A DNA stretch of 64,000 bases from Vitrella brassicaformis CCMP3155. Its lineage: Eukaryota > Protista > Chromerida. Below, piece after piece: positions 52,808 through 58,781 of the stretch. How positions within the stretch are numbered: position 1 is the first letter of the stretch; each line of letters starts with the position of its first letter. The translations under genes were made by a program, and so were the position numbers. The DNA is taken from NCBI GenBank assembly GCA_001179505.1, contig CDMY01000303.1, forward strand, positions 62,001 to 126,000, in the 5' to 3' direction. The notes under the pieces are model-generated. The model had not been told where the DNA came from. It worked only from the letters and a program-made list of their open reading frames with translations, and did not search any database.

Positions 52808-55451
52808 CTACGGGGCGCCCGCACCGCCAGCAGCAACGGTGTCTGTCGTCTCCTGCGGTGCTGAAGGTGCGTCAGATCGCCGGAGCGCCCGCATGGCTGG
52901 CTCAAGCGCCCTGTTGGTGGCCTCCAGCTGCAGCACCACCCAGGCGTACTCCTGCCGGAAGGAGTCACTCATCTCAGCCCGGGAAGCCGCAGCACCAGCA
53001 GAAGCAGAAGCAGCAGCAGCAGCGGCAGCAGCAGAACCACCGCCCCCGTCCGCTGCTGAGGCGGCATCGTCGGTCGCATTGTTGGCCGCCACCTCTGTGT
53101 TGATCTGCATTGCCCCGTCAGTCACATAGGTAGACAGAATGACAGACGGATAGATAGATAGACAGAGGGAGGGAGGAATGCCATCGGTGGGCTGCCTACC
53201 GTCCTGAGGGTGTGGAGCAGCCTCTCCTTGCGATCGAGGAGCCGAATCATGGCCGCCAGGCACCCCACATCCAGCGCTGCACTCGCACAGACAGACAGAC
53301 AGACGCCCGTAAGAATGGGTGGTTCCTCGGTGCGGGCGCTCTGCAGCTCACCGCTGATGCATGTGTTGACTCGGCCCGAAAACTCTGACAAGAAGCCGAT
53401 GGCCTCATCCTGTGCATCATAGCCCTCTGCACACACAACACATCCATCCATCCATCGATCCATCGATTGACAAGGCCGCCGCCAGGCGACCCCCGTGAGT
53501 GTTATTTACCGAGGAGGTGCGTGTCGGCGACATCGAGCCTCCGGCCGTCGGTCGTGTCTGTGAGGGGAAAGACGTCCGTGTCGACGACAGACGCGATGCC
53601 GCCAGCATCCGGGCGGCTCAAGTGCACGAAGTATCGACACACCGAAGTGGCGCCGTCAGTGTCTGGCGAGGGGAAAGCGGAGGGGCTCGCCAGCCCGTCA
53701 GATCTGATGTGAACCAATCCATTGTCAGACAGGGAGGGAGGGAGGGGGGGCAGAGAGATGGTTGGCTGACCCCGTTGTGGTGAAGTCGGCCGTGCCCATG
53801 ATGGTCCCCTGCTCCAGCTCGCGAGTGTTCGGGTGCACAGCTGCAGCCAGACACCGAACCAGGGAGCGCAGAGCACCGCACCCCACCGCACCACCTATCG
53901 CGTACGCGCCGTTGGGTGTTCGTGCATGCATTAATGTTTACCGAGGACGGAGTCGCCTGACACGAATGGCTGGGGGATCACCTGCACTCACACACGGAAT
54001 CGAATCGCACACATCACATGCGCGCCATGCGTACGCCTCGATATGGTCCCCCACGCCGCCACGCCAGCAACGAATCGAATGGACTGACTGACCTGCAGGT
54101 ACGAGAAGAGGTCTCGGAACTCGTGGGGCACCTGCCGCTTCGCCTGCAGCAGGTGGACCGCATGACGATACCTACAGACAGACACCAGACACCAATGCAA
54201 TACAATGCGATCAATGCTCTCTCTCTCGTGTACATCCGATGGGGGAGTGGAGGGGCCTTGACGCACCTCTGTAGCTTGTGCCTTTCTTGTGCGAGGAATT
54301 TGGCCGACAGCCGCCGCATCCGGCCCATCTCGGCACGCAGACGACTCCACTCACGACGCAGCAAACCGACACGCTGATGACGGATATTTGCAGGCTCGGC
54401 TCGTGTCGACACGTCCTGTAGAGTTAGTTCTTGCCTCTCTAACCTACCCGCTGTCTGTTTTGGTGCAGGATGGGGCACCGCTGGCAGAGTGTGGCCTCAA
54501 ACTCATTGGTGTCGAAGTACAGCCGGTCTATCGGGCTGTAACACCACTCATACCTACACACAACACAACACACCGATAGATAGATGAGATGCATGAACCA
54601 ATCGATGGATGGATGCGAAGAGCCAGCCATACGTATCTGATCTGAATGCCTGCAAACCAGCCCACCATCTCCCCCACACACCGACCTGCAGAATTTGGTG
54701 GCGGCTGAGGACATCAGGCACCGCCTCAGCTCCAGCTCGCGCCTCATCAGGCTATAGCGCACCTTGCTGTCGGTGTCCTCTCCTGCTGCTGCTGCTGCTG
54801 CCGAGGCATCAGTCATCTCGCCGCGAAGGGCCTGCACCAACGAGATGAATGAAGCCCCTGGCTGTGCGTGTGTGTGTTTGTTTGTTTGCGCCCCCTCATA
54901 CCCCCCTACCTGATAGCCATCGTCGACAAGAGGCGCGACGGACCTGAGTGTTCGAACACATACCCGGATGGATGGACAGATGGACACCCTCAAATGCGTC
55001 AGTCAGGCTCGCTCTTGTCTGCGTGTAGCCATCAAGCACTATCCATCCCTCCCTCAATCCATCCATCGATCGTACCATGCCTTGCGCAACGCACGCCGGC
55101 GCTGCACAGGGGCAGCCCCGCTCCCTGCCGAAACGTGCTCCTGGTCCTGCACACAACACATACAAGGGCGGAGCTCGATGAGCACACGACCACGGCGTTC
55201 GTGCATTGAATGACTGACCGTCGTGGGCTGTGCTTCTCCGTCGCCGCCGGCCGTCATGGCCTCGTCCTTCTTGCCTCCCTCCTCGCCAGCCCGCATTCTG
55301 ACCATCGCACACACACACGGAAGGAAAGGACGCCATTGTATGCATACGACAGACACATCCAGTCGATGCGATGTGCGTGTTCTGGTGGATGAATGAGCTG
55401 CAGCCATACAGGGCCTACCTACCTCAGGAGCTGTGCCGCAAGCCTTGCCAT
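52808..55451 (-). CDS. LIN9: LIN9 / ALWAYS EARLY-like protein (DIRP domain, Tudor-like region, C-terminal helices)
   Basis: KFCRYEWCYSPIDRLYFDTNEF and LLRREWSRLRAEMGRMRRLSAKFLAQERHKLQRYRHAV (DIRP: FEWFYS.ID...F...EF; R.EW..IR..lG.PRR.S..FL.EER..L..YR). Also AVHPNTRELEQGTI, LAAMIRLLDRKERLL and FRQEYAWVVLQLEATNRALEPAMRALR. The 5' end is approximate. Confidence 0.82.
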
Positions 55452-55638
55452 CGGGCCGACGGAGAAGTCATGAACCCATCAGCTCATTGGTCGGCCATGA
55501 TATTGGAACACTCAGGGAATCCAAAGTGGCACAAAAACTCATCATGATGTCTCGTAGATCTCACGATAGTACGAGCTTAGTGGAGAAGAAGCGTGGATGG
55601 CATTCTTCCGACCCAGATTTTTCTCTCGGTGACCGAAG

Positions 55639-58032
55639 ATGGAGTGCCCTAACTGGATCTTCGCCCTGGTGCTCGTCTTCTCGCTATGGCGCATCCGCGT
55701 CGACGCCCGCCGCATCTCAGCCCACACTCGAGGGGCGCCTGCAGCCTTCCTGCATCTCATGCCTCAACTGCCAACATTCGGCACAGATCGCCGCACCGGC
55801 AGGCAACGAAGAGGCCATGCAGAAGCAGCAGCAGCAGCTGCCTCATCCCAACCTTCCCCTGTGGATGAGCTCATCGCCGAGCAGCCGTCCCTCTCGCCCA
55901 TCCAGACGGACGCCAATGTGCCCGACGGCCACAGGGGGCTGCACTCGTTCCTCTACGACGACGGCAAGGAGGACGACGCCCATGCGGCCAAGCCAGCCGG
56001 CAGCCGCGGCCGAGTGCGGTTCGACGGCGTCAACATGTATGGTGTGGATCGGTGGCTGGGCATGCACAGGGAGGAGAGGGTGTGCGGGGTGTACAGCGTC
56101 CTCGACGAGGACCGGTCTGTGCAGTATGTGGGGGTCTCCAGGAACGTCGCTGTCGCACTGGAGAGCCACAGGCGGCAGACGCCGCCGGGCACCGTCGCTT
56201 TCGTCCGAATCAAGGTGCGCACTGAGGCAGACAGACAGAAAGGTGTGTGTGCGTGTGTCCAAAATGTGTGTGGCTGCGTGTGATCCATCTCTGTGTGCAG
56301 AGCTGGGACTATCCTCGTCGGGAGGAGATGGATGCGCTGAGGGACGAGTGGATCAGGGAGAGCGGGAGGGTGCCCCCGGGCAATGAGGACGCCTCACTGG
56401 GATTTGCAGAGACCATCAAGGACGTACGTACCTATGCACGCACCCACAATGCACAGACGAGGAGGAGAGGCATCGACGTGTTTGCGTCTGTGGTTGCAGG
56501 CGTCTACTGACGGCATGAAGGATGACGAGAGGCAGCAGTACCACGATAACAAGGTGGGCCAGCGAGTGGGTCAGGGGCGCCACTGACTCACCAGACAGAC
56601 AGGCAGACCAACCCATCCATCCATCAGCCGCTCTCTCTGGCTGCGTGTGTCCATCCCTACTTGTCGCTCAGCTCAAGCTGCGGCGTGCAATGGCCGACAA
56701 CACACTCATCGACGAGACGCCAAACATCATCGAAGAGGAGATCATGAACAGGTCAGAACCAACCCACCCACCCAGAACGCACCGCTTCCACCGTCTATTA
56801 TGAATTGCCGTTGATTGTCACGTCACTTCACTTCACTTCACCTCACCTCAGGGAGGCCTTGCTGCACGCCCTCAAGGACGACGACTGGTCTGCCGTCATC
56901 GACGGGCAGACCAACGCGACCCTGAACCCACAACTCATCAACGCGCAGCTGCAGGAGGCACTCAAGATCGGCCGTGACGACACCTCCACAGACACACAAG
57001 GGGAGGCAAACGTGGTCAGCCCATTCGCCCCCGGCAGGCAGGGCGACGACGCAGTGGCAGCACGGACAGCCGAACCTGCTGAGTGTAGGCCCGCCACGCA
57101 CATAGCAGCCAGCACCCACATCCTTCAGCTTTGATTCGCGGTATGTGTGTGGTGGGTGTGTGTGCGCAGCTCTGCCGCTGACAGTGGACAACGTGGATAG
57201 GGTGCTGGACGATGTGCGGCCGTACCTGCAGGCCGATGGGGGCAATGTCATGGTGGTCGCCGTCGACCCCACACACAAAACGGTCACTGGCAGGCAGCAA
57301 GGCAGATTCTGGCGAGATTAGACATTTATGAGGCATTCATTCATTCAGCCATGGCTGAATCGTCCCTTCTCTTGGTGCGGTGTGTGCAGATCAGCCTGGC
57401 GCTGCAGGGTGCGTGTGGCAACTGCCCGTCGTCCCAGATGACGCTCAAGATGGGCATCGAACGGCTCCTCAAGTACGCACCGCGCCGACCCGACATCAGT
57501 GAATGCCACACTCATCTGCCTGCGTCTCTCTTTCGTGTTTCCGTTCCTTCCCTCCACACGTCACTTGTCGTGTGTGCAGGGAGACGTGGCCCGACTTGAA
57601 TGACGTCGTTCCAGTGTCCGACCCCTCCTCGCCCCATGCGGCCCCCGCCCCCCTGCCCTTCGGCGTGGAGCTCATCGAACGGCACCTCGAGGAAGTGCGG
57701 TGGGGCCTCAACGGCATGGGCGCATCGTGCGATGTCATCGAGGCCAAAGGTGGGTACCACACACAGACAAGACAGACAGACAGACAGACATGGGTGTTCC
57801 ATGTGTCTGGTGTCTGGTTCATGGATCCTTCTGTGTGTGGGTGTGGGTGTGGTTGTGGTTGTGTGCAGATGGTCGTGCGGTGCTGCGGTATGCCGGTCCA
57901 GACCCAGGCCGGATCACGTTCGGGATCGAGCTGATGCTCAAGGACGCCGTGCCCAACAACCAGCTGCAGGTCGTCGAGTTCGTCACTGACGAGCCTCAGA
58001 CGGACGACAGGCAGCAGGCCACAGCGGCATAG
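55639..58032 (+). CDS. NFU: Plastid-targeted NifU-C (NFU) Fe-S carrier fused to an N-terminal GIY-YIG-like domain
   Basis: Signal peptide + AAF transit start. GVYSVLDEDRSVQYVGVSRN...E..EW (GIY-YIG-like). LTVDNVDRVLDDVRPYLQADGGNV...LALQGACGNCPSSQMTLKMGIERLLK (NFU CxxC). A second, Cys-less NFU-like domain ELIERHLEEVRWGLNGMGASCDV...ITFGIELMLKD. Stop at 58032. Confidence 0.9.
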
Positions 58033-58781
58033 ACGGGGGGAGGGGGGAGGGGGCGGCAGGGGGGATTGACGGATGGTGAGGTGGATGGCCATATGTGAAT
58101 GCTCTATTGGGCATGCCTGCCTGCCTGCCTGCTGCCGTTGTGATGGATGCGCTGAGGTGCGATGGGACGGGCACATAGAGATCGAGTGCAAAGGTGACTG
58201 AAGGACACTTTTGTGTGTTGAACTCATTATCCATCGTCTTGTTTATGCATACGTACAATGCGCCGACACGCCCATCTCTCTCTCTCTCCCTCCCTCCCTC
58301 TCTACGTGTCTGTTCATGTGAGTGGTCGGGTCAGCGACCCTTGTGTGACCTCGTCTCGTCAAGGATTTTTCCACACATCCATCGAGTCACGTGTCTCATC
58401 GCATCACCATCGCCTCGAGTGTTCCACACGAACCGCACTTCACCTCACACCCACACTCCGTGACGTGCTCTAGGCATCCCTCCATCCATCCATCCAGTTT
58501 ACGAAAATCGGCACACACCGTGCAAACGTGCAGAGAGGGGGGGGGGGACACATCAATCGCACAGTTAGACTGCCCATGGCTGCGGACAACCCACAGACAC
58601 TCTTAGATACAGAGAGATGTAGAGAGAGACGCGCTGGCCGATTGAGCCACGTGTGCGCGTGGGGGAGTGGGTGCCTGGCGACAGGGTAAGAGAGAGAGAG
58701 CCGGGCATACAAAGGAAAAAGGTAAAGAGAAAGGACTGTGCCCTCGGCACATACACCACACACCGCCAGTCATCACACGCG

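What the first reader, a model, noticed from the sequence alone, without database searches (positions are those of the whole stretch)
55639..58032. GIY-YIG-like domain fused to a plastid NFU Fe-S carrier
Seen: one spliced frame joins a bipartite presequence, GVYSVLDEDRSVQYVGVSRN (GIY-x9-11-YIG pattern), a helical linker, and NFU with CGNC plus a degenerate second NFU repeat. Known: Arabidopsis plastid GRXS16 has the same type of GIY-YIG-like domain fused to a different Fe-S carrier (CGFS glutaredoxin), while plant plastid NFU1-3 lack it. Inference: this domain has been joined independently to two different Fe-S transfer modules, so it may act in plastid Fe-S trafficking, redox sensing or nucleoid coupling and not only as a nuclease.
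Basis: partly seen in the sequence, partly recalled or inferred. Interest (0 to 1): 0.75.

Follow-up and report, generated by a model that had tools for sequence, protein, structure and literature searches.

The report
Vitrella NFU1: GIY-YIG-like domain plus NFU
This is a real, expressed nine-exon gene of the alga Vitrella brassicaformis for a plastid-type iron-sulfur carrier (NFU) with a GRXS16-like GIY-YIG domain at its front, but this architecture, and this very protein, were already described in a 2021 survey of algal Fe-S machinery.

Summary
The stretch 55639-58032 (+) is a nine-exon gene with eight GT..AG introns. Assembled contigs from four public runs carry it as one spliced molecule. 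It equals the public 531-aa protein CEM00986.1 / A0A0G4ERY6 of Vitrella brassicaformis CCMP3155.

Its parts, in order:
- a hydrophobic N-terminus followed by an unconserved extension;
- a GIY-YIG-fold domain homologous to the N-terminal domain of Arabidopsis GRXS16 (profile against PDB 2LWF, E 1.3e-18);
- a linker with conserved short motifs;
- an NFU domain with CGNC;
- a second NFU domain without cysteines.

Przybyla-Toscano et al. 2021 (PMC8003979) already describe the "NFU1" type, a GIY-YIG domain fused to NFU. They report it in Chlamydomonas, many microalgae and all land plants except dicots, and they note the same domain in GRX6/GRXS16. Their supplement lists this protein (Vbra_20791.t1).

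Contrary to that paper's text, the family keeps the degenerate second NFU domain. The canonical GIY-YIG arginine position is not conserved, so nuclease activity remains open. "Independent" joining was not resolved.

The scan's only other note on this (s1-221930) is the same stretch read in an overlapping window.

Verdict: already known, low interest.

The parts
55569..55638 (+). 5' untranslated part of the transcript. This is the lowest position reached by a spliced contig, not a mapped start.
   Evidence: table 8: X6 record 7 starts at 55569, X1 record 1 at 55582, X2 record 3 at 55592.
55639..55893 (+). Presequence, residues 1-85: a hydrophobic signal-peptide-like stretch (residues 6-17), then an unconserved region rich in S/T/A/R. 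Inferred to be a bipartite plastid-targeting leader.
   Evidence: Kyte-Doolittle mean up to 2.7 near the N-terminus; composition of residues 24-95. Alignment with homologues only begins near residue 86.
55918..55956 (+). Conserved short motif VPDGHRGLHSFLY (residues 94-106), family consensus VPEGHxGLHxFLY. It was modelled with low confidence, so it is probably a flexible binding motif.
   Evidence: P95 24/29, H98 20/29, L101 23/29, H102 26/29, Y106 20/29; pLDDT 53-66 there.
56020..56214 (+). GRXS16-like GIY-YIG-fold domain, first part (residues 128-192, end of exon 1). It holds GVY (Y152), YVG (Y163, G165), R168 and H177.
   Evidence: 2LWF at E 9.4e-4, 5.9e-21 and 1.3e-18; pLDDT 95+; 2LWF, UvrC, Eco29kI, I-TevI.
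56301..56423 (+). GIY-YIG-fold domain, second part (exon 2, residues 193-233): a helix with E200/E201/E208 and W209, then PPGN (N220).
   Evidence: the alignment to 2LWF runs through PPGN.
56500..57084 (+). Linker (exons 3-5, residues 234-356) with conserved family motifs: KLKLRRAMADNTLIDE, DDDWSAVIDGQTN and VVSPF.
   Evidence: alignment of the linker in 12 full-length relatives; the same motifs in the published NFU1 set.
57193..57607 (+). NFU (NifU C-terminal type) domain, residues 364-430, spread over exons 6, 7 and 8 (the range includes two introns). The cluster-binding C402-G-N-C405 lies at 57414-57425.
   Evidence: exon 6 at 8e-7, exon 7 at 2.9e-10; P0001 NifU 2.9e-26, residues 290-356 of P0001.
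57656..57996 (+). Second, degenerate NFU domain without CxxC (residues 447-520, exons 8-9; the range includes one intron).
   Evidence: hhalign 98.7%, E 3.4e-16 against the family's own NFU domain; the profile hits both domains of AtNFU2, 2Z51; same helix-strand-strand-helix-strand order twice; 2Z51 at 1.3e-13 over 163 columns.
58030..58265 (+). Stop codon TAG (58030-58032) and at least 233 bases of 3' untranslated transcript.
   Evidence: table 8 (X6 record 7 runs on to 58265).

Best explanation
The gene is Vbra_20791, the Vitrella brassicaformis member of the published 'NFU1-type' plastid NFU proteins. It is a nuclear, nine-exon gene transcribed as one mRNA.

The protein starts with a leader that most likely takes it through the ER into the secondary plastid (inferred).

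The working part is a plastid-type NFU module. It has one NFU domain whose CGNC pair would hold a [4Fe-4S] or [2Fe-2S] cluster between two subunits and pass it from the SUF scaffold to client proteins. It also has a second, cysteine-less NFU domain that serves as a structural partner, as in Arabidopsis NFU2/CnfU. This mechanism is inferred from homology to characterised NFUs.

In front of it sits a GIY-YIG-fold domain homologous to the N-terminal domain of GRXS16 (shown). What that domain does is not known. My lean is that it is an accessory module for docking, nucleic-acid binding or regulation, and not a dedicated nuclease. The reason is that the canonical GIY-YIG arginine position is never basic in the family and the canonical glutamate position is poorly conserved. 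However, the Tyr, Tyr/Phe, Arg(+5), His and Asn positions are conserved, so catalysis cannot be excluded.

The gene probably came with the red-algal plastid ancestor (inferred). Red algae and stramenopiles have it, and Vitrella plus Chromera fall outside the green clade.
For: - Gene model and single mRNA.
- Identity with the public protein CEM00986.1 / A0A0G4ERY6 ('GIY-YIG domain-containing protein', Vitrella brassicaformis CCMP3155).
- Listed as an NFU1 orthologue (jgi|Vitbras1|7107|Vbra_20791.t1), with the architecture described in the text: PMC8003979.
- NFU domain: Pfam 2.9e-26.
- Degenerate NFU domain.
- GRXS16-like domain: exon 1 alone against 2LWF at 9.4e-4. An NFU1-only profile against 2LWF gives 1.3e-18. 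The fold search gives 2LWF at 1.7e-6, then UvrC, R.Eco29kI and I-TevI.
- Residue conservation.
- Relatives with the same build in Chromera, Galdieria, Gracilaria, Tribonema, Phaeothamnion and Tetradesmus.
- Tree: Vitrella+Chromera at 91/89, with the green clade separate at 98/99.
Against: - Plastid targeting was not tested with a predictor or by experiment.
- No biochemical data exist for any NFU1-type protein in what I could read.
- Pfam GIY-YIG never reaches its gathering score (14-17 bits against 22.6).
- My mapping of catalytic positions rests on linear spacing relative to UvrC and I-TevI, recalled from knowledge. It does not rest on a residue-level superposition.
- Liu et al. 2013 reported nuclease activity for the GRXS16 domain in vitro (cited; the paper itself was not held), which speaks against a purely non-catalytic role.
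- The tree has few named taxa and is rooted only at midpoint.
Confidence: 0.88

Rival explanations
1. The fusion is an annotation or assembly artefact: two neighbouring genes (a GIY-YIG gene and an NFU gene) wrongly joined.
For: Contigs cannot by themselves prove a single transcript (caveat printed). The Pfam domains lie about 1 kb apart on the DNA.
Against: Single spliced contigs from 4 runs in 3 studies cover exon 1 to exon 9 with all introns removed and one open frame. The linker exons carry motifs conserved in every relative, and the same fused build occurs in red, green, stramenopile and chromerid proteins.
Confidence: 0.02
2. The N-domain is an active GIY-YIG endonuclease that couples plastid DNA cleavage or repair to Fe-S or redox status.
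For: GIY-YIG fold. Near-invariant Y152, Y/F163, R168, H177 and N220. In-vitro nuclease activity has been reported for the GRXS16 domain (Liu et al. 2013, as cited).
Against: The position 10 residues after the YIG tyrosine, where UvrC and I-TevI carry the essential Arg (from knowledge), is S/A/T in 29 of 29 sequences. The Glu expected 12 residues before the Asn is acidic in only 9 of 29. The Chromera orthologue has lost both G165 and R168. The proposed GRXS16 interdomain disulfide could not be confirmed, and the domain's physiological role is called unclear in 2026.
Confidence: 0.25
3. The two fusions (to NFU and to the CGFS glutaredoxin) are not independent acquisitions of a free-standing domain. 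On this reading, the GRXS16 N-domain was copied from an older NFU1-type gene within the green lineage.
For: The NFU1 type is found in red algae, green algae, streptophytes, stramenopiles and chromerids. GRX6/GRXS16 is 'almost never present outside the green lineage' (PMC8003979). A search of 1.84 billion representatives with the Vitrella domain gave 38 hits. Those I inspected by motif, Pfam or source name were eukaryotic NFU1-type proteins or fragments of them, plus one GRXS16 type (P0032), one low-complexity hit (P0002) and one doubtful hit (P0035). I saw no evident free-standing bacterial form.
Against: The paper's table also marks GRX6 in Bigelowiella, Symbiodinium and some red algae. My tree holds only one GRXS16-type row, on a 3.07-long branch with unsure placement. 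A single-sequence search is weak evidence for the absence of prokaryotic relatives.
Confidence: 0.4

Closest known systems
Algal and plant 'NFU1-type' proteins (Chlamydomonas Cre17.g710800 and orthologues; Przybyla-Toscano et al. 2021, PMC8003979)
   Same: Same order of parts: VPEGH motif, GRXS16-like GIY-YIG domain, KLKLRKAM / DDWS-VID-QT / VSPF linker motifs, NFU with CxxC, and a C-terminal cysteine-less NFU-like domain. The Vitrella protein is listed in that family's published sequence set.
   Different: It has a chromerid-style leader with a hydrophobic start. It lacks the cysteine that many green members carry at the position of GRXS16 Cys123 (GTVAFVR here against ERCAFVR and similar). 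The paper's text says the type lacks the degenerate NFU domain, which my profile and fold comparisons contradict.
Arabidopsis GRXS16 N-terminal domain (PDB 2LWF)
   Same: A homologous domain across its full length, from GVYAV to PPGN (E 1.3e-18; Foldseek 1.7e-6, TM 0.63 by target).
   Different: It is fused to a CGFS glutaredoxin and not to NFU. GRXS16 has a 4-residue insertion before PPGN. The GRXS16-type sequence seen here (Netrium, P0032) lacks the upstream VPEGHxGLHxFLY motif.
Arabidopsis NFU2 / CnfU (PDB 2Z51), the plastid NFU + degenerate NFU pair
   Same: Two tandem NFU folds. The first has CxxC and the second does not. The hit is 39% identical over 163 aligned columns, and the profile of the second domain hits both 2Z51 domains.
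   Different: NFU2 has no GIY-YIG-like domain and no long linker. The inter-domain orientation in my model is uncertain (pTM 0.48, rmsd 10.8).
Canonical GIY-YIG nucleases (UvrC N-domain 1YD6/1YCZ, I-TevI 1LN0, R.Eco29kI 3MX1)
   Same: Same fold. The GIY Tyr, YIG Tyr/Phe, a His 14 residues after it, and the C-terminal Asn are kept.
   Different: Sequence similarity is below Pfam's threshold. By linear spacing the essential Arg position is S/A/T and the Glu position is variable. An extra N-terminal strand and helix are present.

Membership tests
NFU1-type (GIY-YIG + NFU) plastid Fe-S carrier, as defined in PMC8003979 | N-terminal GIY-YIG-like domain of the GRX6/GRXS16 kind | tested here: met
NFU1-type (GIY-YIG + NFU) plastid Fe-S carrier, as defined in PMC8003979 | NFU domain with the two cluster-binding cysteines (CxxC) | tested here: met
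   CGNC at residues 402-405; Pfam NifU 2.9e-26
NFU1-type (GIY-YIG + NFU) plastid Fe-S carrier, as defined in PMC8003979 | Placed in the family by its authors, with full-length similarity to the other members including the linker motifs | tested here: met
   Supplement entry Vbra_20791.t1 under 'NFU1 orthologs'; alignments
NFU1-type (GIY-YIG + NFU) plastid Fe-S carrier, as defined in PMC8003979 | Absence of the second degenerate NFU domain (as stated in the paper's text) | tested here: not met
   A cysteine-less NFU domain is present here and in 11 relatives. I read this as an imprecision in the paper's description, not as grounds for exclusion, because the paper's own listed sequences carry the same C-terminal region.
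NFU1-type (GIY-YIG + NFU) plastid Fe-S carrier, as defined in PMC8003979 | Plastid location and Fe-S cluster binding and transfer | not testable with these tools
   Only an N-terminal hydrophobic stretch plus an unconserved extension was seen
Plastid-type NFU (NFU + degenerate NFU; AtNFU1-3 / CnfU) | Tandem NFU domains, the first with CxxC and the second without | tested here: met
GIY-YIG nuclease superfamily (Pfam PF01541) | Profile match at Pfam's gathering score | tested here: not met
   14-17.1 bits against a cut-off of 22.6; 12 of 22 relatives match at E up to 1, best 1e-4
GIY-YIG nuclease superfamily (Pfam PF01541) | GIY-YIG fold (three-stranded sheet with flanking helices) | tested here: met
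   Foldseek: UvrC 1YD6 at prob 1.00 and TM 0.65 by target; also R.Eco29kI and I-TevI
GIY-YIG nuclease superfamily (Pfam PF01541) | Catalytic set: Tyr (GIY), Tyr (YIG), Arg on helix 1, Glu (metal), Asn | tested here: inconclusive
   Both Tyr positions and the Asn are conserved. The Arg expected at Tyr+10 is S/A/T in 29/29, with an Arg at +5 instead. The Glu at Asn-12 is acidic in 9/29, while E201 is E/D in 21/29. The mapping is by spacing only.
GIY-YIG nuclease superfamily (Pfam PF01541) | Metal-dependent nuclease activity | not testable with these tools
   -
GRXS16 / GRX6 (class II CGFS glutaredoxin with N-terminal GIY-YIG domain) | CGFS glutaredoxin domain | tested here: not met
   No CGFS motif and no glutaredoxin Pfam hit in P0001

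The most novel reading that the evidence does not exclude
The GRXS16-like GIY-YIG-fold domain may not be a nuclease. It could instead be an old, plastid-specific accessory module of Fe-S trafficking, serving partner docking, nucleic-acid tethering or regulation. On this reading it first arose on an NFU + degenerate-NFU carrier before red and green algae split, and was later copied onto a CGFS glutaredoxin. The conserved histidine-bearing VPEGHxGLHxFLY motif in front of it would then be a so far unnoticed binding element.
Probability: 0.3. Interest if true: 0.45.

Novelty: already known. Interest (0 to 1): 0.15.

Why it matters
The biological question is open and reasonable: why do two different plastid Fe-S carriers carry the same GIY-YIG-fold domain? 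But the field has already posed it, including for this protein, so the finding adds no new kind of system.

- direct transcript support for the Vitrella gene model;
- evidence that the NFU1 type keeps the degenerate second NFU domain, so it is a full plastid-type NFU with an N-terminal addition, which corrects a sentence in the literature;
- a residue table suggesting the domain departs from the canonical nuclease active site;
- a conserved upstream motif that could guide mutagenesis.

Tried and rejected
- Exons were searched one by one by reference. The full-length work used public proteins returned by the tools (P0001, P0039).
- Exon 2 alone against PDB gave only chance hits because it is too short.
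- Exons 8 and 9 alone gave no Pfam hit, because the degenerate NFU domain is split by an intron. This was resolved with the profiles A3/A4 and a model.
- The original GRXS16 structure paper (PMC3677505) is not held, so its residue-level claims could not be read.
Prokaryotic free-standing relatives were therefore not searched by profile.
- The domain tree did not place the single GRXS16-type sequence because its branch is long.
- P0002 (3151 aa, E 7.9e-30) is a low-complexity artefact with nonsensical Pfam hits and was ignored.
- P0035 looked spurious and was left out of the alignments.
- Rows left out of the tree as fragments or for junk ends: P0003, P0011, P0016, P0017, P0019, P0024, P0030, P0033, P0035, P0038.
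Full report
**Observation**

The stretch 55639-58032 on the + strand reads as a nine-exon gene: 55639-56214, 56301-56423, 56500-56553, 56672-56751, 56852-57084, 57170-57282, 57390-57472, 57580-57749 and 57869-58032. Every intron begins with GT and ends with AG, and the frame closes at 531 codons plus TAG. My first guess for the end of exon 7 was two bases too long; I corrected it by reading the sequence.

CGNC is residues 402-405.

**One mRNA**

One index search found eight public runs holding the stretch. Several held about 0.55 of its sampled words, which equals the exonic share.

I laid contigs of four of these runs, from three studies. Each run has a contig that runs from 55569-55592 through all exons to 58029 or 58265, with the introns skipped at exactly the predicted GT..AG borders and no other differences (tables 5 and 8). 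The 57747/57867 joint is visible in table 8.

Contigs cannot show transcript ends or strand.

**Identity**

A search of 1.84 billion representative proteins with residues 108-192 of exon 1 returned a 100% match, P0001. Its cluster holds the 531-aa protein P0039, which is CEM00986.1 / UniProt A0A0G4ERY6, named 'GIY-YIG domain-containing protein', from Vitrella brassicaformis CCMP3155.

Each exon's own in-frame translation lies in P0039 in order. Exactly one residue is missing at each of the four split codons. From this point on, the public proteins served as references.

**Domains**

Exon by exon, Pfam gives a sub-threshold GIY-YIG match in exon 1 (E 0.026) and NifU matches in exon 6 (8e-7) and exon 7 (2.9e-10). 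On P0001 the NifU match is 2.9e-26.

*N-domain*
- Exon 1 alone hits one solved structure, 2LWF, the N-terminal domain of Arabidopsis GRXS16 (E 9.4e-4).
- A profile of 22 NFU1-type domains, with no GRXS16-type row in it, hits 2LWF at 1.3e-18 over the whole domain from GVYAV to PPGN. I-TevI comes next at a non-significant 0.32.
- An AlphaFold2 model of residues 86-234 has pLDDT of 95 or more over the core.
- That model finds 2LWF first (1.7e-6), then the GIY-YIG domains of UvrC, R.Eco29kI and I-TevI.

*C-terminal region*
- The C-terminal 178 residues fold as two copies of helix-strand-strand-helix-strand.
- The model matches Arabidopsis CnfU/NFU2 (2Z51) over 163 columns at 1.3e-13.
- A profile of the second copy matches the family's own NFU domain at 98.7% probability, E 3.4e-16.
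- The same profile hits both domains of 2Z51.
- The second copy has an eight-residue deletion where the CxxC would be.

**What is already known**

Przybyla-Toscano et al. 2021 (Int J Mol Sci 22:3175, PMC8003979) state the following:
- Similar proteins occur in many microalgae and in all land plants except dicots.

Their Table 2 marks NFU1 as present in Vitrella brassicaformis CCMP3155. Their supplement prints jgi|Vitbras1|7107|Vbra_20791.t1 under 'NFU1 orthologs'. Apart from what look like machine-reading errors in the stored text, that entry is this protein.

The premise that plant plastid NFUs lack the domain holds only for dicots such as Arabidopsis.

A 2026 review still calls the physiological function of the GRXS16 endonuclease domain unclear. 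It also notes that the proposed interdomain disulfide could not be confirmed.

1. [quoted passage not shown] The comparisons above show the domain is present in Vitrella and in 11 relatives. The sequences in the paper's own supplement carry the same C-terminal region. The NFU1 type is therefore a complete plastid-type NFU with an N-terminal addition.

2. Conservation over 29 domains:

| Position | Conservation |
|---|---|
| Y152 | 28/29 |
| Y163 | Y or F in 29/29 |
| G165 | 27/29 |
| R168 | 28/29 |
| H177 | 26/29 |
| W209 | 26/29 |
| N220 | 26/29 |
| Ten residues after the YIG tyrosine | S/A/T in 29/29 |
| Twelve residues before the Asn | acidic in 9/29 |
| E201 | E/D in 21/29 |

The position ten residues after the YIG tyrosine is where UvrC and I-TevI carry their essential arginine. 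That statement comes from my knowledge of those enzymes, and the mapping here is by spacing only. The Chromera orthologue Cvel_13098 has lost both G165 and R168. These points make a classical nuclease mechanism doubtful but do not exclude it.

3. Upstream of the domain lies a conserved motif, VPEGHxGLHxFLY (VPDGHRGLHSFLY in Vitrella). It is modelled with low confidence and is absent from the GRXS16-type sequence I saw. The linker carries further conserved motifs: KLKLRKAM, DDWS-VID-QT and VSPF.

**Relatives and origin**

The 38 hits are mostly NFU1-type proteins or fragments of them. Named members include:
- Chromera velia
- Galdieria phlegrea
- Gracilaria domingensis (source name 'GIY-YIG endonuclease')
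- Tribonema
- Phaeothamnion
- Tetradesmus

One hit, from Netrium, is GRXS16-type, with a CGFS motif.

In a maximum-likelihood tree of the domain, Vitrella and Chromera pair at 91/89 support. They lie outside a well-supported green clade (98/99). The GRXS16-type row sits on a very long branch and cannot be placed.

This is compatible with inheritance through the red-algal plastid ancestor. It leaves open whether the two fusions were independent.

**Mechanism, as far as it can be stated**

*Shown*
- One mRNA.
- The domain order.
- Homology of each domain.

*Inferred from the characterised NFU family*
- The CGNC pair of two subunits holds an Fe-S cluster received from the SUF scaffold and hands it to client proteins.
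- The cysteine-less NFU domain is a structural partner.

*Inferred from the N-terminus*
- Import into the complex plastid, based on the hydrophobic start and an unconserved extension of about 70 residues.

*Open*
- The role of the GIY-YIG-fold domain. I lean towards a docking, tethering or regulatory role over a dedicated nuclease, at roughly 50:25. The rest is unknown.

**Verdict**

Novelty class: already known. Interest is low.

The scan's only other note on this (s1-221930) is the same stretch read in an overlapping window.

Noticed in passing
window 52808-53260 and 54014-54475, - strand: ORF pieces upstream match DIRP (6.7e-9) and, weakly, LIN9_C (0.007). This is probably a LIN9-like (DREAM/MuvB complex) gene on the opposite strand, head to head with the NFU1-type gene. 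A separate contig ends at 55564, while the NFU1-type contig of the same run starts at 55569. The two transcripts may therefore abut within a few bases.
   Followed up: partly
window 55918-55956 (residues 94-106): The motif VPDGHRGLHSFLY (family consensus VPEGHxGLHxFLY) is conserved from red algae to streptophytes in NFU1-type proteins and is absent from the one GRXS16-type sequence seen. Its function is unknown and its model confidence is low.
   Followed up: partly
P0007 (Chromera velia Cvel_13098), residues about 97-130: The Chromera orthologue reads YVSWSSD where the family has YVGxSRN, so it has lost the near-invariant Gly and Arg. It also sits on a long branch (2.44) in the tree. This suggests relaxed constraint on the N-domain in Chromera.
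   Followed up: no
window 57757-57798 and 58266-58300: Simple repeats (cagacagaca... in intron 8, and a ct-rich run downstream) were skipped by the reads tool. Several short chimeric-looking joints and loose ends cluster at 57832-57857 and 58110-58134, where gtgt-rich and gcctgcc repeats lie. I read these as repeat artefacts.
   Followed up: no
P0015, P0020, P0025, P0027, P0029, P0031 (relatives of 300-434 aa): A shorter subtype of the family lacks the middle linker (no KLKLRKAM or DDWS motifs) but keeps VSPF, NFU and the degenerate NFU. It includes Gracilaria and forms a supported clade with unnamed environmental sequences.
   Followed up: no
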